Assembly: GCF_021869535.1 (NCBI RefSeq)
Contig: NW_026262679.1
Location: 39,494,001 to 39,558,000 of the forward strand
Reading direction: 5' to 3'
DNA: 64,000 bases
Origin: Mytilus californianus
Taxonomy: Eukaryota
Of this stretch, positions 9,331 through 29,100 are shown in pieces. The position numbers and the translations under genes were made by a program. Every line of letters starts with the position of its first letter. The stretch's first letter is position 1. The notes under the pieces were generated by a model that did not search any database, was not told where the DNA came from, and was given only the letters and a program-made list of their open reading frames with translations.

Positions 9331-9590
9331 GCTTTCAATATAGTCACCAAACTATGAATTATTTAGTGAGAGGTAATCATCTACGTGAAGTTAAAGGATA
9401 ATGCTTGCTCCTTTTCGTATTTCCTTAGAATCTCCTGTATGAATTCTGCCTCATATGAATAAAGGAACAAGCCGGAAAGAACAGGAGCACAGATGGTTCC
9501 CATGAGAATGCCGATTGTTTGTTGACAAACTCGTCCTCCAAACGTTACAAATATGTTGTCAATCGAGACAGCAAGCATCTTGATAATATA
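9290..9590 (-). mobile_element. Penelope-like RT fragment (third PLE family)
   Basis: ORF 9381-9578: IDNIFVTFGGRVCQQTIGILMGTICAPVLSGLFL…SFNFT, a degraded PLE RT IGIPMGTNCAP core, followed by a degraded YIDD-like motif. Confidence 0.8.
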
Positions 9591-9829
9591 AAAATAAGGA
9601 TATGTGGTATGATTGCCAATGAGACATTATGTCATGTCATGTAATGCTCTAAATCGAGACAGAAAGAGGTTGTTACCACACTTTTGTACTTTTTGTCCAA
9701 ATATATATCGATTTCAATAATTAATGAGCTCGAGTAACTATATTGTTCTTGAAAAACTATGTAGATTTATAAAAATTATAAATGTGAGGGTCACTCCTAC
9801 TGGTTAGTTTGTAATTCAATACTTTATAT

Positions 9830-12735
9830 AGAAATAAGAAGATGCGGTATCAGTGCCAATGAGACAACTCTCCATCCAAGTCAAAATTTATAAAAGTAAA
9901 CCTTTACAGTTCAAAGTACGGTCTTCAACACCGAGCCTTGGCTCACACCGAACAGTAAGCTATAAAGGGCCCCAAAAATTACTAGTGTAAAACCATTCAA
10001 ACGGGAAAACCAACGGTCTAATCTATATAAAAAACGAGAAACGAGAAACACTTATGAACCACATCAACAAACGACAACTATTGAACATCAGATTCCTGAC
10101 TTAGGTCAGGTGCAAACAAATGCAGCGGGTTTAAACGTTTAAATTGTACCAAACCTTCACCCTTTTTCTGAAACAATATGTTAACATCACAACATAGAAA
10201 GACACACTATAAAATATCAACTGAAATAGCTTAACTCAATCAAAGGACATATTAACACCAGTGAACATACACTGAACAAATAAATTTGACCTATGATACA
10301 ATGTAAATACAAAATAAATAAACTAAGGGAAGAATAATAAAAGTAACATGTTATACCGGTATGAAATGTTAAACAATTTAAGAAAAACAATATGCTCGAA
10401 CAAAAATATCAGCCATTTGCAATTAGTTTAAACACAGGTAAATGAAAATAGTTTTGTTGTAAGGTATACGTGTACAGTTCCAATATAGAAAGGAAATATT
10501 TTTACAAAATAAATAATTTTGATGTTCATAGTACGAAGTGAAAATTTATAGTAATACTAAACACTTATCAAAGCTGGTATATAGACCAGATATAACCCTG
10601 AATAACATTAAATAACAGAAAAGCATAACAATTAGTATCAACAGGTCAAATAAACAAGAAAGTACGATTTGAGAGTACTCGCAGTTACTGACAGCTAGTT
10701 AAAAGCCAAAACAATTAATAATAAAAAATCATGCATCAGAGACTAAAATCAACTAAAACACATCCCAGGGATTTAGTATATTAACGTCATAGATAGTCAA
10801 AGAAGACATGACTAGTGCAATGCCAAAAATAAATGTATCGACAGACAGTAGGATAGTAGGAGTTTAACCTCTTTATAGATCAAAATGAACGTGGGTGTGT
10901 CTTTATACATCCCGTTTGAAAAGAATACAAATTTAGTTATGTTTTCATTTGCTGATGACAAAATCGATATAAGGGCCAATGTAAACTATATTCAAAGATC
11001 TAATTACAACATTGGTAAGATAACCTTTACTAATAAGTTTGTTTAAAGGTTCGATGAGTTAACACGGATCACATAGTGATTTCCGCGCTTTAAGTACAAT
11101 ATTACCGTAAAATTTAGGATGTGAAATACCGTTTTTAATCAGTTTTCTACAGATACAGCCAAATTTACTAATCAAATCTTTGTATCTATGAAAGAACTTG
11201 GTAAAAGTTTTACGTAATTTATGGTAAAGAAATCCCTGACTTAATAATTTACCAGTGATGCATTGATTACGTTCGTTAAAATGTATGACATCACTACACA
11301 CAAGGGCATAACGAACGAGTTGGGATATATAAACACCGTATGATGGAGCCAAAGGAATATCGCCGTCTAAAAAAGGAAAATTAACAATAGGGAATGAAAA
11401 TTCGTCTCTTATGTCGTAAATTTTCGTATGGAGTTTTCCTTTAGAGATTGAAATGTCCAAATCTAGAAAAGGACAACTACTGCTGTTTATGTTAGATTTA
11501 GTTAAAGTAAGTTCTATTGGGCAAAATTTCGGTAGTATATTTAGAGAACTCTGGATTATTTAACGAAAAAATATCATCTAGAGAACGGACGGTATTGTTG
11601 AATGTATCAACCAAATGTAACAATGACGTGTCTTTACTGAGTTTGGTCATAAACTGAGATTCATAGCAATACAGGAATAAATTTGCTATTAAAGGGGTGC
11701 AGTTAGTGCCCATAGGAATACCTACTACTTGTCGATACACTTTATCGCCGAAACGTACATATATGTTGTCCAGGAGAAAATTTAAAGCTTCAATCATATC
11801 TTCACATTTCCAGTAAGTGTATCTAGCATACTTTCCCTTTTCGTTACAGAAAAAGGCTTTAAACGAGTTACAGCAAATAAATTTGTAATGAGATTTTTCA
11901 AAAGACCATTTATTAAATATGAAAACTTTTTCTTGATAAGATTGTGTGGAAGTGTAGTATAGAGTAGAAAAATCATAACTGTCAACAGAATTAAAAGGAC
12001 CATCAAAAGCATGTATTTTATTTAAAACCTATAAAGAATTTTTAACACTTCAAAAATAATTAATACCATTATTTTCATAAGCTTTATTACAAAAGTTAAT
12101 AACAGGTTGTTTGGAAGTAGTAAGGGAGGTAGTTAGAAGCACTGATAGATTGGTAGTAGAACGCTTACTAGATGCGGAGATGAAACGGAATTTAAATGGT
12201 TTTTTGTGCAATTAAGGTAACCAGTACATAATAGGGACTTTCAAATGTTCGGAAGAGGCTTTAAGCTGGGTAGTGGCAGTGATATGCTTGTTTACAATTT
12301 GACTCTCTGTGGAGCGTACGGACTTGAATGTAGATGAATTTGTAATTTCGTTTTGGAGAACTTCCGTGTAGTATATGCGTCACACCACCACTACATTATT
12401 TTCTGCTTTGTCTGCCGGTACGAACACAAACCGCTTTGCGAGTACTTGGAGTTTATTTTTTATTCTTGAAATGGGAATATCATGGACCCTATTACTAATT
12501 TCAGAATCGTTTTCAAAATGAGATATACGAATATTAACAGTATTCATAATTTTATTCAAATAACTGTCTAGAGATTTTTTATCAGATTTTTCACGTTTAC
12601 ACCAATTTTTACAGTAGACAGACAGAGCGTCTTTAATGACCTGACGACACTGTTTCCAATCTATTTTAGATGGAGGACGATATTTCGGTCCTTTCTTAAG
12701 AAAAGTTATGACCTCACGGTCTTCGACGATTTGAG
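9830..12735 (-). mobile_element. Naiad-type Penelope-like retroelement A; 5'-truncated and decayed; candidate selenoprotein ORF
   Basis: RT pieces KGPKYRPP…FVFVPADKAENNVVVV*RIYY…MYWLP*LHKKP…RQVVGIPMGTNCTP…SLDDIFSLNN…FPFLDGDIPLAPSYGVYISQLVRYA. Native stop at ~10933-10935, then a 3' UTR running to ~9830. Contains several stops and frameshifts. Confidence 0.9.
10741..10798 (-). promoter_or_regulatory. SECIS element (type II) in the 3' UTR of Naiad A
   Basis: Minus strand reads GACUA-ucu-AUGAC-GUUAAUAUACU-AAA-UCC cug GGA-UGUGUUUUAGU-UGAU-uu-UAGUC. This gives helix I, a UGAC/UGAU quartet, an ~10-bp helix II, an unpaired AAA and an apical mini-stem (folded by hand). Confidence 0.8.
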
Positions 12736-12779
12736 GTCTCCTGTTATGTTTGTATTGTTAACGTGTACTTTAATATTTA

Positions 12780-12958: not shown

Positions 12959-13419
12959 ACTGAACTAAAAACTCAGCTTTCGGTGGCTTAGTGTTACCTT
13001 TTCCCGTCAGTGGAATCTAGAGTTGTAACACAATACATGATATATTAGGCATGAAGATGGAATTGATTGCAGATTAGCTAAATTATCTATCGTAAAGGAT
13101 AGTAAGTACGTCTAAACAAGTGACAACTCTACGATATATATATTCTCTGTAACTATGTAATTTGTAGTTAATGAGAAACAAAGTTCATACAGACACATAT
13201 CCACCAAAGTTCAAATGAAGTGGATGTAAGCAATTATGTCCTTTTATACAAGGTTTTGTTTGATTCAGAGTATTTTTACAAACTAGTCGATTTATCCCTC
13301 ACAAAAACAAGATATTTTTATCTAAGTATTCTTTCCATTAATTATTCTCTCCGTTTTTTGGATATTTCTTCATTTTTACAATTGTGAGTCTATCAATTAA
13401 AATCCGAGAAGAAAATATT

Positions 13420-13880
13420 TGGAAATCGTCTGTTCAATGTCGAGAACTTCGTCGTTACAACAAAATTCACAATATATTATCAGTTCACACACTTTTACAT
13501 CTTGCCGTTGTCTACCTGCGAAATCGTCTGTTCAATGTCGAGAACTTCGTCGTTACTACAAACTTCACAACATATTATCAGTTCACACACTTTTACATCT
13601 TGCCGTTGTCTACCTGCATTTGAATGATAAATTATTATTCATGGTAAAACTAGGCTCAATAGCAATAAAGGATGACCAATGCTCTTTATGTGGTTGTCTT
13701 TCCACTGATGTTGTTCAACATTTAATTATGTACTGTGAACACATTTTGGATGAAAGAAATATCATGTTTTACGGAATTGTACCAGTTCAAGAATCTGTAC
13801 GCTTTTTTCAGCAAGATGATGGCGATATAGTCGTAGCCTTACTTGGTGGTATTACAGATTTTATGCAACTATGAACTCTG
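13420..13880 (+). mobile_element. Decayed non-LTR retrotransposon 3' end (CCHC knuckle) with a 98-bp tandem duplication
   Basis: CSLCG…DVVQHLIMYC is a C-x2-C…H-x4-C motif typical of LINE ORF2 C-termini. Direct repeat at 13422-13519 and 13520-13617. Confidence 0.55.
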
Positions 13881-20120: not shown

Positions 20121-23100
20121 ATGGACTCAATTTTGGATGCAGTCCAAGAAATGAAAAGGCAACAGAAAACTGTATGGCAACGTCTAAATTCACTTACGTA
20201 GGTAACATAATATATCGTACGGAAATGAGTCACTTTAGTTATCAACCGTGTTTATGTTTTAAAAGTAAACATGCTGCGATATAATATATTTATAAATTTA
20301 AAATCATTACAAAATTTGTACATCTCATTATAAACACAACAAGTGCCACTGCTGCAGCGGGAATGGCTAATCTTTCAGAGCACATGTCTTCATCAAAGTA
20401 TTTGGTGATATTGTGATCTTCAGATTTTAGTTGTCTTTGTCATGTTTTGTGGGCAGTTGTTCTTCTTTCATTTTTTTTTTCATTTGACCATTGAGATGTC
20501 TTTGTTTTGAAAATATGTTTAATGCACCTCTTGTTCTTGTTAGAAATTTTTTAAAAAGCTACCATTCTGATTATTAAATCCCAATTCAATTTGGTGATAT
20601 CAAGACTGCTGCTATGAAAACATGTACAAAACTTCGGTAGAATAATAGTTTGTCTTTTCAATATTACAGTGTGTATGACTGATAAACCGTGACATATCGA
20701 AAGAAAACCTCAATCTAGAGCTGATTTGTATGGTTATAAGTACCTTATTTTATAACGCATATCTGTATTTCTATAGCAATAAAGTGTTTAAAGTAATCTT
20801 AAGCTACAATCTGAAAACACATTTCTAAGTTAGGAAGAAGTCATTAAAGTTACTTAAAAAGAGACAACAACCCGACCAAAGAGCAGAAAACAGCCCAAGA
20901 CCACTTACCATGCTTACAATGCACCATTAGCAACATGACGGGTGCCACTAGTAGATCAGAATATGCTTATAGTTCCGGAGCACTTGAGATCTTCCAGTTT
21001 TTGGTGGGGTTCATGTTAGTCTTTAGTTTTCCTTCTAGTATTTTGGTCTCGTGGTAGCGTGTTCGCTTCGAGTGCGGGAGGTCGTGGGTTCGAATCTCGG
21101 CTGGGTCAAACCAAAGACTTTAAAATTGGTATTTGCTGCTTCTCCAAGCAAGTGGCATTAAGGAGTAAGAGCAAAGACTGGTTGGCTCGGAGTCATAATA
21201 ATGTGTCCGGTTGAGGTGACATGTCTTCCTGTGGACTGTTACGTTGTGAGCTAGCACGTTAAATATCCGACTAAGCATTGCGGTCTAGTACAAAGCAGGG
21301 TAAATATTCATATTACATTAACATGTTCTCGTCCTGAATATGCATATTAATTTGCCGCTGGACGTTAAGCATCCATCCATCTTCTGATCTAGTATTTTGT
21401 TAACTTGTTTGTCTTTTAGTCCTCTTTCGTTTTTTTCCATGGCGTTGTCTTTTTATCTAGAATTATGATTTTTGAATGTCCATTTATCTTCCGTCTCTTT
21501 TTTAATACACCATATGAATGTTTAATTTACATACCACTAATTTGTTGCGCTCATATTAAAACTTATTGAAAGCAAACCAATAACGAATTTTAGTAATTCT
21601 TAAAGCCCGTAATTCCAAAACTTTGTGCAAAATATTAATGTCGCTGAGGCCATCTATGACTGATATCAATTGATTTTCTCATTTATGAACAATAAATGTA
21701 CAAAAAAAATATGCATGTCTGGTATTTCATTCATTACCGGGGCGATGATTATCAGGTTGATGATAGCATCGGCGTTAACCGTCCACCAACACTAGTATCG
21801 ATTCATTGATGGATACTGTTTGAAGATTTGATACCTGAAATAAGTTTTCACTAAATATTCTATCGGAATCGTCAACTTCTTCCTTATGGAAATAATACGG
21901 GTTTATTTTCGTTTCAGCTTAGTTGAGAATTCCAAGCAAACGATCAGACGACTGGAAAGTAAGTAGTTATGGTTAATCATTTGTACACACATTAAATATG
22001 TGTTTGATCGAGTTTGTTTCCAATAATTTGCCTGCAAATTGACGTCATTCAATTACATGTATTCAGTATTGTGATATGTAACGCCACTTCTTATCGAATG
22101 ACGTCTGTAGTCAATTCCACAGTCTGTGCATTTACAATAACGTTACACAATCACAGTCGACGTTTGCGGGATATTTTATATGTTTTATTTTGGAAAATTA
22201 AACGAGCATTGCATTTGAACATGAATATCAGTAATGTGTTTATAGAGCCGGTGGGATATAATCATTATATTTATCAGAGACAAATAATACTAGTATATGT
22301 CTCTCAGATTATAGAGGTTATAAATTGCATCATATTGTCCAGTAATTATCCTTTAAAATGAAACAGCAAACTATTTTGTCGATAAGATAAACAGTTAAAG
22401 GAATATCATTGTTTTACATTTTATGATTTTAGGAGCTACATTATCATCTTGTGAATAGGAAACATCAAACTCTATGTTATATTGAAATTGAATAGAATTT
22501 TCAACCCCGAAACATTAGAAGTTTTAGTTAAAGCAAAGCGAACTATAAGATTTATATCAAGCTTTAAGAAAATTGAAAAACTAGGGGAAAAGCTATAAAA
22601 GACCAACTATATTTAGAGAACTATTCATAAATATTTTGCGTACATGTTTAAACAACTGTTTTACAGATCTGGAAGAACATGTACAAAACTTAGAGACACA
22701 GTGCGATAACAATTCTACCAAACTGACCGATATTAATCTACTAGTTCATTCTTTGTTAGAAGTAGTAAACAAATTTGTTGTTGCGGTAGAAAATCTTCAA
22801 GACAACAGAACTTCAGAAAAGACGAAAAATCTATTAGATACAACAGATAAAAGAAATAATAAAAATAGAAATCATTCTACAACTACTTGTTTGACAAATA
22901 TCAGTGTACCTGTAAGAAAAGATTCGGACGAGACTGAAAATAGTAGAAATGCCAAATTTGATCAGCCTATTTATAATATGAATTCAGAACACACAATTAA
23001 ACCCGACATATGTAAGACAATGTGTCCATACAAAACAGATTTATCAATAGACGTTTACAACGTGTCAATTTGTAATGATTTTTCGAGAAGAACGCATAAA

Positions 23101-26100
23101 GATGACAGTAAGTATATTACTGATGCTGAAGAACATCGATGCACATGTGATGATAATGGTCAATTTGCATGTAAAGAAGAAGACAATGTGCCAAACAAAG
23201 ACAGAAGTATCCATACAACTCACACCGTACAGCTTTCAAAAAACAGCATGAATTGTACTAAGCCGAATAAAAGGTGCACCATCAATAAATTTGGATATAA
23301 ATGCAAAAGTTGGAATATACAAAATGATAATCGTATGAGCTTTCATGGTACTTCGCCAAGATTTGAAGGTAATGACTTTCCATCTTCTACTTTTCAAGTT
23401 CCAGTAGAATGCTCACCAGTACCTAATATTAAGCAAACTGAGAATTTTTCTCTCGAAACAAAACGCAGATTCATGTCACTGAAAAGGTATGTCACATAAT
23501 TACATGTTAGATATTATGTACATTAAATCACTTTGTAGCTCTGCTTTTCAACATTTGCTACCTTTAACAAAGGGGTTCGTAGAAATTGCAAGAAATCTCA
23601 ACTATTTTATGTTCAAGATGCGTATCATTTTCCGAGCACCACTTACAATACAACAAGATAACCAATTAGAATCCATGAAAATTAATTCCACATTGAGGTA
23701 ATCCCAGTACTACTGTAATATTTATTTCACATTGGAACAACACTTACCCGTTGTGAAATAAAAAAAACCCAGGCGAAAAAAACATATTCTTAAAAATGCA
23801 ATAAAAGCCATGGAATTTCATTTCAATGATATTTAAAAGAGGTCCATAAAATACAACATTTTAGATGAATACTATAAATATACTGATATCTGTCTAAAGA
23901 GAGAACTTTTGATCAACGAAAGATGTATATACAAACCAAAGGAAACACTATAAAAAAACAAGTGCTGTACTAGATTTGCAAGTATCAAATATATAACGGA
24001 AGAAGTTCAAATATAAATAATGTAACATTTGTTTCCGTGTGCATTTGAATCCTACATAGATATATTTTGAAGTAGATACTAAAGTGTTGAAACTAAACTG
24101 TCTAAAAAAAACAAATATAAGTAATTAACCTTTTTACAATAATGATGTAGATATCATAAATTGGTCACAACGTGTACTGAATTGTATTGTCAATATAGAG
24201 ATTTGTTGTGGAAGAGTGATTCCAATTGCAGACAGAAATATAATAAAAAGTTTGATTTCGCATCCATATTCTAACAGTAATATTGTCTATAAAGTTAACA
24301 AATATTTCTCTTTGGCTTAATAAACATATTGCAAAAGGTTATAACTTTACGCCTTTTGTTCTAATATTTTTTCTCGTATTGTCATACAAATAGAATTGAA
24401 AATGTATTAGAAAATATGTATACATTAAGGTTTTGTAGCGATTCAACTGTAAAAGACTGTGAAGATGAATGTGAATTGATTAATTTACCACAAATGAGTA
24501 CTAGATGTACAAAAAATGACTTTGGATACAAAACCACAAGATCAGATATTCAATATGATAACCGTGTGAGCTTTCATGGTAGTTTAGCATGTTTTGAAGG
24601 ATGTATAATTTCATCTTCAACAATTGAAGTTCCAGAAGAATATTCACCAGTACCCAATATAGAGCAACCTTTCATTCATCATACCAAACCAAATGTTGTA
24701 CCGTCAGAAAGGTATGTAATAAACTATATATATAACAGGTTAGATATTGTACAATTGAAGCTTCTGTATTTATCTGTACTGAATTATACATATGTTTAAC
24801 AACTATGGTAGCCTTATAACGAAGTATAGACTATTTTTGTAATTATTTTTTTCTGTAGAAATGACTGATTGGTGTTCCCTTACACCGCATAACCGCAAAC
24901 GATTTATCGCTACAAATGCCTATCTATATACTTGGACATATTGGAGGTAGTTTTAGTTATTTGCAATTTGTACATTTCCCTTTGATCTTACTGCCTAATA
25001 ATTTCAAGATCATGGACAGGACTTGATACTCGAAAATATTAGGCAATGACGGCATGCATCAGTGCAGCAAGGTCACGTGATCATGTCCGACCGCTTCAAT
25101 TTATCAATGAAATGCACGCGACTTCATTCATACAACCGAACAACTATCCCAACGTTTTGTACGCTTAAAAGTAGTTTTACTTATAATTTCATTTTACTTC
25201 ATATTCTCAACCAAAAGAAATAGCCGATAAACAGTCGGAAAGCTGACCCCGGTTTGACCCCATTTCTAAAGACAACAATGAAAGTCATGTGACTACCATA
25301 TCTGGTCATTTTTTTTTTTTGTCATTTTTTCTTCAACTAAAACGATATCAAATGAAATCAAAGCATGCTGTACGTTATAAATGCCAACTGCGTATACTTT
25401 CTAGAGGTTCTAACAATTCTAATGTGTATAGTGTGAACATGAAACAAACCGGGATGCGGTATTCAGTACGTAGGTGAAACTGGACGATATTTATCTAAAC
25501 GCACTCAAGAACATCTGTATCGTTTTAAAAGACCCAATAAATTCAAAAGTATCATTTATCAACACCTTAAGAAGCACAATCATCCTATTAAATATTTAGC
25601 AGTTCAAGCTGGTGAATCTCATTCAAAGTTTGTACGATCACGGAAAATAATTGAATTAAATTGGATTAAAAAATTACAGACAGTCTACCCTCTTGGTCTT
25701 AATGATAATATCATGGGAATTGGTAATATATCAAGAACCGATTCTGTTAACATTTTGGATATAGTTTCTAAAACTGTTCGTAAAAACCGTTCTCATGGTC
25801 GTAGAAAAAAATCGCAATCAAAGAAAATTTCGGACCAATCATACCAATATTTCGGACCTAATTTCTATTTCAAAAAACAACGGCAGACATTATCTGTTAA
25901 ACAAAGCTCTGTTCATTACCGGTTAATAAGTTAAATAAAATTTTAGAGGATTGCAACACAATTTCATATAGCAGTCCTAAGTATGAAATCGTTCAAATTA
26001 TAATGGCATATTGTTATTCTAAACTGTTTCCCAAAATTGATCGCCCTGAAGATCATAAAAAACAGTTTATTAAAATAAAGTATGTTAATAAAGGTTTTGA

Positions 26101-29100
26101 TTTTGTAAATATTGCCGGTATTTTTAACGACCATTCTGTTAAAGAAAAAATTCCGGGATATTTTGATAATACTGAGCTCCCTCTTATTTGTTATATTTAC
26201 AAGAAATCTACCCGGAAATTTGTGTTTAATTATAGTCAATTGTGTAAAGATGTTAATATCAGTGAAAATACACCTACTTCATGTAATTGCAGTAATTCCG
26301 AATACATTTATGGACCCATTTCCCATGTTATAACAGGAGATCTTAACATCGTTCAAGACCGAGAGTTAAAATCATTCCTCAGTAAAGGACCTAAATATCG
26401 TCCCCCGTCAATTATTAATTGGAATGAGTGTCGTAATATCATCCACGACTCACTCCATACTTACTGTTTGAAATGGATAAAACGGGAAAAAGCTGACAAA
26501 AAATCTTTGGACTCTTTTTTTTAATTCAGTAATGAACATAGTTGATATACGTATTCAACATTTTAAAGAACATTTTACTCTTAACAATAACCACAATAAA
26601 CCTATTTCTCGTATCAAACATAAACTAAAAGAACTAGCCAAGGAATTTGTTTTTGTCCCGGCCGATAAAGCTGCTAATAATATTATTATTGTTTGACGTA
26701 AATTTTACATTGAGGTTCTGAAAAAAGAAATCACCAATTCACCAACATTCCAACTGACTCCATTTTCAGAAAACGACATCTGTAACAAACATAAACTTTT
26801 AGCTACCGCTTTACAAGCAGAACCAAATACAATGAAAGTCCCAACTATGTATTGGCTTCCGAAGCTACACAAAACACCTTACAAATATAGATTTATTTCG
26901 TCTTCAAGCCATTGTTCCACTACTTAATTGTCTATTCTTCTTACCAGTACACTTGGTACAAACAAAAACCTGATAATAAATTGTTCAAATAAGGCCTTTG
27001 AAAATAGTGGAATTAATTACTTTTGGAGTGTCAAGAACTCGTTGGAAGTACTTGATAAATTACATGCATATATTGGTGATTTTGAATCTGTTCAAAGTTT
27101 TGATTTTTCTACCCTATATACCACATTGCCTCACATTCTCATTAAGAAAAAATTCACACACCTAATTAAATGGGCATTTAAAAAGTCAGAATGTGAATAT
27201 ATATGTTCAAACTCTTTTAGGTCATTTTTAGTAGCAATAAACAAAAAAACTATGTCAATTGGACATGCTTTGATACTATATATGCCTTGAATTTTTACTA
27301 GATAACATTTTAGTTTGCTTTGGAGATTCCGTATATCGTCAGGTTATCGGAATTCCAATGGGGACTAACTGTGCACCACTTATTGCGGACCTTTTTTTGT
27401 ATTGCTATGAGTTACAATTTATGACAAAAATCAGCAAAGACCCATCGAAACAACATCTGATACACAAATTTAATAATACTTTTAGATATTTGGATGATAT
27501 TTTGGCTCTCAATAATGACGACTTCAGTATGTATACTAAAGAAATTTATCCTGTTGAACTTACTTTAAATAAAGCTAATACTAACAATGACCACTGCCCT
27601 TTCCTCGATCTTGATATCTATATCATTAATGGAAAGCTTAATACTAAAATATATGATAAAAGAGATGATTTTTCATTTCCTATCGTTAATTATCCATTTT
27701 TAGATGGTGACGTTCCCTTGTCACCATCTTACGGTGTTTATATATCTCAACTTGTACGATTCGCTCGTGTATGTAACAATGTTTTAGATTTTAACGAGAG
27801 AAATTTATGTATTACTGAAAAATTATTACATCAGGGTTTTCGATATCACAAACTAGTCAAAACATTTACTAAATTTTATCATCGGTATAAGGACATCATT
27901 CGTAAATATAGCTCAACATGCAGACTTCTTATACGTTCAGGTATTTCACATCCAATTTTTTATGGAAATATTCTTTATAAAGCACAAAAATGTCAGTATT
28001 CACCTCTGAAGCTAACAAAACCTTTAAATAGACTTATTAAGAAGGGATATAGTTACGATACTGTTGTCAGGTCATTAAAGATTGCATATTTATTTTGGCG
28101 TTAATATTGATTCACTTATAGGGTCTTTGCATCGGCACTAAACACAATTATTTAAAAACCAGTTGTTGGCATGACACGGGTTATGTTCTTCTCATATATG
28201 TTATGATGGTATGATACTAAACCCCTAACGGGAAGGATTGTGCCTGATATTCATATGATGAAGACATAATCTTTCAATCAGTTTAATTGAAGTCTGGAGC
28301 TGGCATGTCAGTTAACTGCTAGTAGTCTGTTGTTATTTATGTATTATTGTCATTTTGTTTATTTTCTTTGGTTACATCTTCTGACATCAGACTCGGACTT
28401 CTCTTGAACTGAATTTTAATGTGCGTATTGTTATGCGTTTACTTTTCTACATTGGCTAGAGGTATAGGGGGAGGGTTGAGATCTCATAAACATGTTTAAC
28501 CCCGCCGCATTTTTGCGCCTGTCCCAAGTCAAGAGCCTCTAGCCTTTGTTAGTCTTGTATTATTTTTAATTTTAGTTTCTTGTGTACAATTTGGAGTTTA
28601 GTATGGCGTTCATTATCACTGAACTAGTATATATATTTGTTTAGGGGCCAGCTGAAGGACGCCTCCGGGTGCGGGAATTTCTCGCTGCATTGAAGACCTG
28701 TTGGTGACCTTCTGCTGTTGTCTGTTCTATGGTCGGGTTGTTGTCTCTTTGACACATTCCCCATTTCCATTCTCAATTTTATGAGGATGACATATTAACT
28801 GAGATACAATAATTTCAAACAGCTTATTGTTGGCAAACGTACCCGTGAATTTGTCTTTGTAATACAATAAAATTAATCTAATTATATGAATAGAGAGTTA
28901 AAATATATTAAAGGCTTCTTTCAATATATCCATTTTTGTTGCTCTGTTTGTTGCAAAGATGAATCCAGAATTTCTTCATGCGATAAACACATACCTTAAA
29001 TGATCACAAAACAAGAAATGTTTTCTAAGGAACTTTAAAAAATGCATTTTTAAGTTTTTCTCTCTGCATTTATCCACCAATTCATTGATTTCTAGTTTTA

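What the first reader, a model, noticed from the sequence alone, without database searches (positions are those of the whole stretch)
26694..26696. Same in-frame UGA in two divergent Naiad retroelements: candidate selenocysteine-encoding retrotransposons
Seen: element B reads DKAANNIIIV-TGA-RKFY (GTT TGA CGT, 26694-26696). Element A, on the opposite strand 14 kb away, reads DKAENNVVVV-TGA-RIYY (GTG TGA CGC, 12380-12382). The two ORFs are clearly different subfamilies (my rough estimate is 55-65% aa identity). Their other stops and frameshifts fall at different places, so this is the only shared stop. Known: PLE RTs usually have Cys here (DKA-x-NN…VC-K/R, from memory), and Craig et al. 2021 (MBE) reported Sec-containing Naiads in spiders and clams. 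Inference: both families encode a Sec-containing EN-RT whose translation depends on host Sec machinery, and possibly on selenium. I cannot tell whether this lineage or this single-site pattern has been described.
Basis: partly seen in the sequence, partly recalled or inferred. Interest (0 to 1): 0.92.

Follow-up and report, generated by a model that had tools for sequence, protein, structure and literature searches.

The report
Selenocysteine-coding Naiad retrotransposons in a mussel
The two shared TGA codons are real and mark two dead copies of mussel Naiad retrotransposons whose better-preserved relatives most likely read four or five UGA codons as selenocysteine using their own SECIS hairpin; this trick, and this exact codon, were published in 2021 for clams and spiders.

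Summary

- **The sites.** Both window elements carry TGA exactly 8 codons after the DKA motif. Craig et al. 2021 (PMC8557442) found UGA at this site in all four published selenoprotein Naiads.
- **The window copies.** Both are 5'-truncated and broken by private frameshifts and stops.
- **The families.** Each has thousands of copies. All 60 sampled copies have TGA at this column and none has TGT or TGC.
- **Family B** has copies with a 1029-codon frame free of TAA/TAG. It holds four TGA codons, all at conserved cysteines: 2nd Cys of CX4CxxC, the Cys before GIY, 1st Cys of CCHH, and DKA+8.
- **Family A** adds a fifth TGA, at the 1st Cys of the CxC motif.
- **SECIS.** Each family has a SECIS-like hairpin after its stop codon. 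It is the only Rfam match there. Covariation across seven Naiad 3' UTRs supports it.
- **Selection and host.** Purifying selection acts on both sides of the TGA. The host (Mytilus, by protein names) has two tRNA-Sec genes.
- **What is new.**
  - Mussels as host.
  - The CxC Sec site and five Sec codons per ORF.
  - Reciprocal Cys/Sec swaps between sister families.
  - Many relatives in other assemblies and marine metagenomes.

The scan already reported this on other pieces of this genome. Sec insertion itself is untested.

The parts
25437..28785 (+). Element B: 5'-truncated, broken copy of a young Naiad family. It starts at about codon 123 of the family ORF.
   Evidence: It is 99.5% identical to an open-frame family copy from window 25437 on. 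The 3' end is placed where about 40 other genomic copies stop matching.
25440..25442 (+). TGA at the first Cys of the CCHH zinc finger of the GIY-YIG endonuclease (family codon 124)
   Evidence: TGA in all 13 family-B copies aligned at this column.
26664..26672 (+). DKA motif (GAT AAA GCT), diagnostic of Naiads
   Evidence: motif definition from PMC8557442.
26694..26696 (+). TGA 8 codons after DKA (family codon 549): the reported site
   Evidence: TGA in 30 of 30 sampled family-B copies, with no TGT or TGC.
28139..28141 (+). Position of the family's TAA stop codon (the window copy is out of frame by then)
28193..28257 (+). SECIS-like hairpin of element B, starting 51 nt after the stop codon
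   Evidence: Rfam SECIS_1, 31.7 bits, E 2.6e-4 (gathering score 35). Sequence unchanged in 23 of 30 sampled copies, with single changes in 6 more. Covariation. The 46-nt core is found 3363 times in the genome.
9827..12744 (-). Element A: 5'-truncated, broken copy of an older Naiad family. It starts downstream of the CxC motif.
   Evidence: 96.9% identical to a family copy. The 3' end is placed where about 40 other copies stop matching.
12404..12412 (-). DKA motif of element A
12380..12382 (-). TGA 8 codons after DKA in element A
   Evidence: TGA in 30 of 30 sampled family-A copies.
10933..10935 (-). Position of family A's TAA stop codon
10741..10798 (-). SECIS-like hairpin of element A, about 135 nt after the stop codon. 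The window copy has three private changes and scores lower than typical family copies.
   Evidence: Rfam SECIS_1, 27.2 bits, E 5.5e-3 here. A typical family copy scores 32.9 bits. Conservation across copies.

Best explanation
The window holds two dead, 5'-truncated copies of two Naiad families. Naiads are Penelope-like retrotransposons with an N-terminal GIY-YIG endonuclease. The host is a Mytilus mussel. The source elements of these families encode a single endonuclease-reverse transcriptase protein of about 1000 residues. In it, four (family B) or five (family A) conserved cysteine codons have become UGA. A SECIS hairpin in the element's own 3' UTR recruits the host's selenocysteine machinery (SBP2, eEFSec, tRNA-Sec), so these UGAs are read as selenocysteine and the full protein is made. 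Shown here: the codon pattern, the open frames, purifying selection, the SECIS-like structure with covariation, and the host tRNA-Sec genes. Inferred: that Sec is really inserted, and that transposition therefore depends on host Sec capacity or selenium supply.
For: (1) TGA sits 8 codons after DKA in both window copies, in 60 of 60 sampled family copies, and 2213 times genome-wide in the DKA-x-NN-x4 context against 0-1 in the control.
(2) Three sampled family-B copies have a 1029-codon frame with no internal TAA or TAG and four TGA codons. The two other frames hold 41 and 98 TAA/TAG.
(3) All TGA codons fall on conserved cysteines: CX4-U-xxC, the Cys before GIY, the first Cys of CCHH, and DKA+8. 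Family A adds the first Cys of CxC. Three of these are the sites published for clam Sec Naiads.
(4) A and B are saturated at synonymous sites (pS 0.70-0.84) but pN is only 0.20-0.27. B against a 77%-identical relative gives dN/dS of about 0.07-0.09 both upstream and downstream of codon 549. The sequence on both sides of the TGA is therefore translated.
(5) SECIS_1 is the only Rfam match at E<=1 in whole family loci. It lies on the coding strand just after the stop. In seven Naiad 3' UTRs, ATGA, TAAA and GA are invariant and 11 of 13 pairs show compensatory changes. 91% of cells are paired against 64% in shuffles (0 of 500 shuffles reach it). Two relatives exceed Rfam's gathering score, at 45.1 and 42.8 bits.
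(6) The host genome has two tRNA-Sec genes over the cut-off.
(7) Family B copies are about 99% identical and number in the thousands, so an element with these TGA codons transposed recently.
Against: No direct evidence of Sec insertion exists here: no proteomics, ribosome profiling or reporter. The Mytilus SECIS hits are below Rfam's gathering score (31.7 and 32.9 against 35). MFE z-scores of single hairpins are modest (-2.05 and -1.55). RNA-seq reads cover the element on both orientations, so sense transcription is not demonstrated. Pfam does not recognise the protein pieces. The sampled copies were the 30 closest to each window copy, not a random sample of the families.
Confidence: 0.87

Rival explanations
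1. SECIS-independent read-through. The UGAs are decoded at low efficiency by near-cognate tRNAs (Cys, Trp or Arg), as in the stop-codon read-through used by some retroviruses. The 3' hairpin is then not a working SECIS.
For: The DKA+8 TGA is followed by C in both families, a context generally regarded as leaky (my own knowledge, not tested). The Mytilus hairpins score below Rfam's gathering threshold.
Against: Four or five successive low-efficiency read-throughs would give very little full-length protein. The other TGA codons are followed by A or G, not only C. The hairpin keeps the SECIS-specific ATGA, AAA and GA signature with compensatory changes across distant relatives. Two relatives pass the Rfam threshold.
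Confidence: 0.06
2. The TGAs are ordinary nonsense mutations that were fixed in dead source copies and spread by copying with machinery supplied in trans. The ORFs are not translated through them.
For: Both window copies are clearly dead. Penelope-like elements are mostly 5'-truncated, so many copies never encode anything.
Against: All 4-5 in-frame stops are TGA, all fall at conserved Cys columns, and there is no internal TAA or TAG in 1029 codons. The same columns are TGA in families whose synonymous sites are saturated. dN/dS is about 0.07 on both sides of the TGA. TGA at this column recurs in at least 47 protein clusters from other sources.
Confidence: 0.03
3. The UGAs are real stops and the element makes separate products. 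Short N-terminal peptides are made first, and the RT core is made by re-initiation at a downstream AUG such as the Met before YWLPKLHK.
For: Gene callers and RefSeq annotate exactly such truncated ORFs of 430-498 aa.
Against: The endonuclease domain itself is split by two TGA codons 11 codons apart, which cannot yield a folded GIY-YIG domain. The conserved DKA segment would be cut off from the RT. This model gives no reason for the SECIS or for the restriction of stops to Cys columns.
Confidence: 0.03

Closest known systems
Naiad_Mmer and Naiad_Scon, the selenoprotein-encoding Naiads of the clams Mercenaria mercenaria and Sinonovacula constricta (Craig et al. 2021, PMC8557442)
   Same: Same element type, in bivalve hosts. 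UGA replaces the Cys before GIY, the first Cys of the CCHH finger, and the Cys 8 aa after DKA. The SECIS lies in the 3' UTR close to the stop codon. Each ORF has 3-4 UGA codons.
   Different: The host is a mussel (Mytilus, Pteriomorphia), which the paper does not list among Sec hosts. There is an extra UGA at the second Cys of CX4CxxC, a finger where UGA was reported only in spiders. Family A has a further UGA at the first Cys of the CxC motif, a site the paper does not list, giving five UGA codons. I could not align to the published sequences because the supplement is not held.
Naiad_Sdum and Naiad_Smim, the selenoprotein Naiads of Stegodyphus spiders (same paper)
   Same: UGA before GIY, at DKA+8 and within the CX2-5CxxC finger, with a SECIS after the stop codon.
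   Different: Spiders use the first, or the first and second, Cys of that finger and not the CCHH Cys. Here only the second Cys of the finger is UGA, and the CCHH Cys is UGA as well.
Cys-type Naiads of bivalves (for example the extended Penelope-2_CGi, and the mussel Naiads in fig. 5 of the paper)
   Same: Same domain order and motifs. The same genome holds 2401 DKA-x-NN-x4-TGY sites.
   Different: These have Cys codons at all the sites. The paper's mussel Naiads have a 5-aa longer CX2-5CxxC finger, which families A and B lack.
Selenoprotein P
   Same: It is one of the few known proteins with many Sec residues decoded processively from one mRNA.
   Different: It is a host selenium-transport protein with two SECIS elements. 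It is unrelated in sequence and function. This comparison rests on the paper's discussion.

Membership tests
Naiad clade of Penelope-like elements (Craig et al. 2021) | GIY-YIG endonuclease N-terminal to the RT in one ORF | tested here: met
   Family-B copies read IIY...YVGET, with the catalytic R, E and N context, upstream of the RT motifs in one frame. Window copy B keeps YVGET at about 25470.
Naiad clade of Penelope-like elements (Craig et al. 2021) | CX2-5CxxC and CCHH zinc-finger-like motifs in the endonuclease | tested here: met
   C-HAKK-U-LT-C, and U...C...H...H around GIY/YIG, with TGA at two of the Cys positions.
Naiad clade of Penelope-like elements (Craig et al. 2021) | KR-rich stretch, CxC motif and GxKF/Y motif between EN and RT | tested here: met
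   RKNRSHGRRKNRNQRK; CNC in B and UDC in A; GPKY.
Naiad clade of Penelope-like elements (Craig et al. 2021) | DKA in place of the DKG motif of other PLEs | tested here: met
   PADKA in both window copies.
Naiad clade of Penelope-like elements (Craig et al. 2021) | Recognisable RT core | tested here: inconclusive
   RT-like motifs can be read (FDFSTLY, PMGTNCA, YLDD), and the ESM Atlas neighbours are animal RT / HTH_animal / GIY-YIG clusters. However, Pfam RVT_1 does not match the pieces at E<=10.
Naiad clade of Penelope-like elements (Craig et al. 2021) | Tandem or inverted arrays with pseudo-LTRs, 5' truncation, and no canonical hammerhead ribozyme | tested here: inconclusive
   Head-to-tail copies 4020 bp apart are seen. 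Most copies are 5'-truncated. There is no hammerhead hit at E<=1 in three family loci. Pseudo-LTRs and target sites were not examined.
Selenoprotein-encoding Naiads | In-frame UGA at the Cys before GIY and at the Cys 8 aa after DKA | tested here: met
   Both sites are TGA in every aligned copy of both families.
Selenoprotein-encoding Naiads | SECIS element in the 3' UTR near the stop codon | tested here: inconclusive
   SECIS_1 scores 31.7 bits (B) and 32.9 bits (A), below the gathering score of 35. The ATGA/AAA/GA signature and strong covariation are present, and relatives score 45.1 and 42.8 bits. SECISearch3 grading, used in the paper, is not available here.
Selenoprotein-encoding Naiads | ORF otherwise intact in the family | tested here: met
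   Three of 30 sampled B copies have a fully open 1029-codon frame. No single sampled A copy is fully open, but overlapping copies cover the whole frame.
Selenoprotein-encoding Naiads | UGA actually decoded as Sec | not testable with these tools
   This needs a reporter, 75Se labelling, mass spectrometry or ribosome profiling. The host does have two tRNA-Sec genes.

The most novel reading that the evidence does not exclude
Sec-coding Naiads may not be four isolated oddities. They may form a large, old, mostly marine clade in which Sec and Cys swap back and forth at five or more conserved cysteines. Mytilus carries at least three such lineages with thousands of young copies. One family has five Sec codons. 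There are natural sister lineages that differ only in which cysteine is Sec. More than 3000 SECIS hairpins are scattered through the genome. That would make mussels a natural system for two questions: what Sec does for a retrotransposon, and whether TE-borne SECIS elements seed new host selenoproteins.
Probability: 0.55. Interest if true: 0.65.

Novelty: new member of a known kind. Interest (0 to 1): 0.45.

Why it matters
Selenoprotein-encoding transposons are known from a single paper and four families.

- **Extension of the known kind.**
  - Here they are among the most abundant young repeats of a mussel genome.
  - They use up to five Sec codons, including a site not yet reported (CxC).
  - They have many relatives in other assemblies and ocean metagenomes.
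- **A natural experiment.** Sister lineages carry Cys and Sec swapped at single positions: codon 412 against codon 549, and TGC in 152 copies against TGA in 67 copies in an identical context. This bears on why Sec is used at these sites.
- **Raw material for new genes.** Thousands of dispersed SECIS hairpins could seed new host selenoproteins.
- **Annotation.** RefSeq lists the truncated ORFs as 'uncharacterized protein'. Some pipelines translate the TGA as Trp. Repeat libraries will treat these elements as broken.

Tried and rejected
- **Rfam at gathering threshold** over the whole window gave nothing. The SECIS hits appear only with the E-value threshold.
- **Pfam** gave no useful match for the protein pieces, so family membership rests on the motifs defined in the paper.
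- **The paper's supplement** is not held, so there is no direct alignment to Naiad_Mmer, Scon, Sdum or Smim.
- **RNA reads** from three raw RNA-seq runs and one PacBio transcript set cover the whole element.
  - Depth rises toward the 3' end.
  - Coverage is on both orientations, and most reads are only 95-99% alike.
  - This shows neither sense transcription of this family nor translation.
  - No well-supported variant was listed at the TGA positions, but 413 rows were not shown, so this is not evidence.
I could not fetch the copies of the third lineage (TGC against TGA) or a random sample of copies, and I did not try another route.
- **No consensus was built.** I tabulated codons column by column on natural copies instead.
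- **The RT tree** cannot give the ancestral state. The protein search only admits products of 264-840 aa, which excludes full-length Cys-type ORFs.
- **Alternative genetic code** was considered and rejected. The 'W' at these sites in some database proteins is a gene-caller artefact over TGA.

Full report
**1. Observation**

Window 26694-26696 (+) reads TGA in the context DKAANNIIIV-TGA-RKFY. Window 12382-12380 (-) reads TGA in the context DKAENNVVVV-TGA-RIYY. The degenerate DKA-x-NN pattern occurs only at these two places in the window, against 0.03 expected by chance.

**2. What the two window elements are**

Three-frame translations show an N-terminal GIY-YIG endonuclease (YVGET) followed by a DKA motif and an RT. 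This is the Naiad type of Penelope-like element.

I compared each window copy with natural family copies from the same genome and mapped the 3' ends through other copies.

- **Element B** spans 25437 to about 28785 (+).
  - It is 99.5% identical to a family copy with an open frame.
  - It is 5'-truncated at about codon 123.
  - It carries six frameshifting indels, one in-frame 24-bp deletion and one TAA.
- **Element A** spans 12744 to about 9827 (-).
  - It is 96.9% identical to a family copy.
  - It is truncated downstream of the CxC motif.
  - It carries four frameshifts and five private stop codons.

Both copies are dead.

**3. The families**

The window's genome is 1.65 Gb in 175 contigs.

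- **Copy number and age.**
  - The first look found more than 2170 candidate copies of the B segment; the best 40 are 99% identical.
  - It found more than 2851 candidates of the A segment; the best 40 are 97-98% identical.
- **Family B.**
  - Three of the 30 fetched copies have a 1029-codon frame free of TAA and TAG. That is 1002 codons counted from the first ATG.
  - This frame holds four TGA codons.
  - The other two reading frames of the same stretch hold 41 and 98 TAA/TAG.
  - The four TGA codons lie at the second Cys of C-x4-C-xx-C, the Cys just before GIY, the first Cys of the CCHH finger, and 8 codons after DKA.
- **Family A.**
  - It has the same four TGA codons at aligned positions.
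  - It has a fifth at the first Cys of the diagnostic CxC motif: UDC, where B has CNC.
- **Column-by-column tabulation on natural copies.**
  - DKA+8 is TGA in 30 of 30 copies in each family.
  - The CxC site in A is TGA in 26 of 27 aligned copies; the other is TAA.
  - The N-terminal sites are TGA in every copy that reaches them.
  - Eight A copies show TGA at all five sites, and eleven B copies at all four.
  - No copy has TGT or TGC at any of these columns.
- **Genome-wide counts.**
  - The DKA-x-NN-x4-TGA pattern occurs 2213 times, against 0-1 for the control.
  - The same pattern ending in TGY occurs 2401 times.
  - The column is therefore Cys in other Naiads/PLEs of the same genome.

**4. 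Selection**

- A and B are 58-64% identical in protein.
- Their synonymous sites are saturated (pS 0.70-0.84) while pN is 0.20-0.27.
- B against a 77%-identical relative from another data set (L063) gives dN/dS of 0.09 upstream and 0.07 downstream of codon 549.
- Subfamilies listed differ next to the TGA only by synonymous changes: ATT/ATC/ATA for Ile and GTA/GTG for Val.

The sequence on both sides of the TGA has therefore evolved as translated protein. The TGA codons were kept while neutral sites turned over completely.

**5. SECIS**

- **Element B.** In a 651-bp search of the 3' region, SECIS_1 matches 28193-28257 (+) at 31.7 bits, E 2.6e-4.
- **Element A.** It matches 10798-10741 (-) at 27.2 bits. 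A typical A copy scores 32.9 bits.
- **Specificity.** In whole 3.5-kb family loci it is the only Rfam match at E<=1, and it is always on the coding strand after the stop. These scores are just under the gathering score of 35.
- **Conservation.** Of 30 B copies, 23 have the hairpin sequence unchanged and 6 differ at one base. Nearly all A copies share one form.
- **Relatives.** Five relatives from other sources each have a SECIS_1 hit at or just after their stop codon. Two are above threshold, at 45.1 and 42.8 bits.
- **Covariation.** In an alignment of the seven hairpins, ATGA, TAAA and GA are invariant.
  - The 10-bp helix between them shows compensatory changes in 9 of 10 pairs.
  - Overall, 91% of cells pair against 64% in shuffles and 38-55% in slid controls.
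  - 0 of 500 shuffles reach the observed covariation score.
- **Single-sequence folding.** Energies are only modestly better than shuffles.
- **Spacing.** The UGA codons lie 1.5-2.9 kb upstream of the SECIS.

**6. Host**

- A 90%-identity protein cluster holding the family-A downstream ORF contains XP_071143438.1 [Mytilus edulis] and XP_052105288.1 [Mytilus californianus]. Both are annotated 'uncharacterized protein'.
- Sequencing runs of four coded organisms hold at least 84% of B's 31-mers. RNA holders include a 'mollusc metagenome'.
- The genome has two tRNA-Sec genes at 79.6 and 77 bits, against a cut-off of 47.

**7. Comparison with what is known**

Craig et al. 2021 (PMC8557442) defined Naiads and reported four families with 3-4 in-frame UGA codons and grade A SECIS elements, in two clams and two spiders.

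- Clams also use the first CCHH Cys.
- Spiders use the first, or the first and second, Cys of CX2-5CxxC.

The paper lists no mussel among Sec hosts. Its mussel Naiads have a finger lengthened by 5 aa, which A and B lack. Four literature searches found no later paper on Sec-coding transposons.

New relative to the paper:
- the host group;
- UGA at the second Cys only of the CxxC finger, in a bivalve;
- UGA at the CxC motif;
- five UGA codons in one ORF.

**8. Wider distribution**

- **Protein search.** A search with the B segment downstream of codon 549 gave 3212 hits. Of the best 120, 43 begin 2-9 residues after the U column and none begins in the 12 residues before it. This is what a stop codon at that column would produce.
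- **DNA checks.**
  - DNA was fetched for seven ORFs that begin just after the U column, and all seven show TGA at DKA+8 (L061, L062, L065-L069).
  - One ORF that reads W at the column (L070) also has TGA there.
  - L062, L066, L068, L069 and L070 also have TGA at the first CxC Cys. L067 has the same four-U pattern as B.
- **The 'W' proteins.** Five database proteins show W at these columns. In the one checked, the codons are TGA read by a TGA=Trp code.
- **Reciprocal swap.** L063 is the reciprocal of B: TGA at CxC and TGT at DKA+8, where B has TGT and TGA. It still has a SECIS-like hairpin.
- **Third lineage.** In the window's genome, one 30-nt DKA context is followed by TGC in 152 copies and by TGA in 67 copies.
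- **Tree.** On a quick tree of 103 RT cores, the inferred TGA state (42, plus the 5 'W') occurs on both sides of the midpoint. The 10 Cys rows need at least 4-5 changes. The sample excludes full-length Cys-type ORFs by length, so the ancestral state cannot be read from it.

**9. Mechanism and rivals**

The best reading (0.87) is SECIS-dependent recoding of 4-5 UGA codons as Sec in the EN-RT protein of the families' source elements. The window copies are relics of these families.

| Rival | Confidence | Main difficulty |
|---|---|---|
| SECIS-independent read-through | 0.06 | It leaves the SECIS unexplained. |
| Inherited nonsense mutations | 0.03 | All stops are TGA at Cys columns, and selection acts on both sides. 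|
| Separate truncated products with re-initiation | 0.03 | The endonuclease is split by two TGA codons. |

Sec insertion, selenium dependence and sense transcription are not shown. RNA reads cover the element on both orientations.

**10. Verdict**

This is a new member of a known kind. Earlier notes of this scan on other pieces of the same genome reached the same reading.

Noticed in passing
window 9381-9578 (-): A 65-aa ORF with an RT-like motif (GILMGTICAPVLSGLFLYSYEAEF) lies just beyond element A's 3' end. It looks like a fragment of a different retroelement family.
   Followed up: no
window 22636-23499 and 24416-24799 (+): Two ORFs upstream of element B share a segment of about 55 aa (…FGYK…DNR-SFHG…FEG…VP-E-SPVPNI-Q). 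It is a repeated unit of unknown nature.
   Followed up: no
window 13384-13874 (+): Overlapping ORFs repeat the same peptide (…VQCRELRRY-K-HNILSVHTLLHLAVVYL…). This indicates a short tandem duplication next to element A's truncated 5' end.
   Followed up: no
G000:C154:27755505-27807263: At least 50 tandem copies, 728 bp apart, of an 81-nt tRNA-like gene. It scores 42.8 bits with the tRNA-Sec model, below the cut-off of 47. It is probably an array of a long-variable-arm tRNA.
   Followed up: no
G000:C1:66493944-66502029 and G000:C13:18890562-18899101: Family B copies lie head to tail exactly 4020 bp apart. This fits the tandem arrays typical of Penelope-like elements and gives the unit length.
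   Followed up: partly
P0101 / L070:601-2616: A public gene call translates the element's TGA codons as Trp (a TGA=Trp code). Sec-coding Naiads can thus look like proteins of an organism with an altered code.
   Followed up: yes
P0153, P0154: RefSeq annotates the ORF downstream of the DKA+8 TGA as 'uncharacterized protein' in Mytilus edulis and M. californianus. The transposon and its recoding are not recognised in these annotations.
   Followed up: partly
G000, 3363 sites: The 46-nt core of family B's SECIS-like hairpin occurs 3363 times (up to 2 mismatches) across the genome. I did not check whether any copy lies in a host 3' UTR.
   Followed up: no
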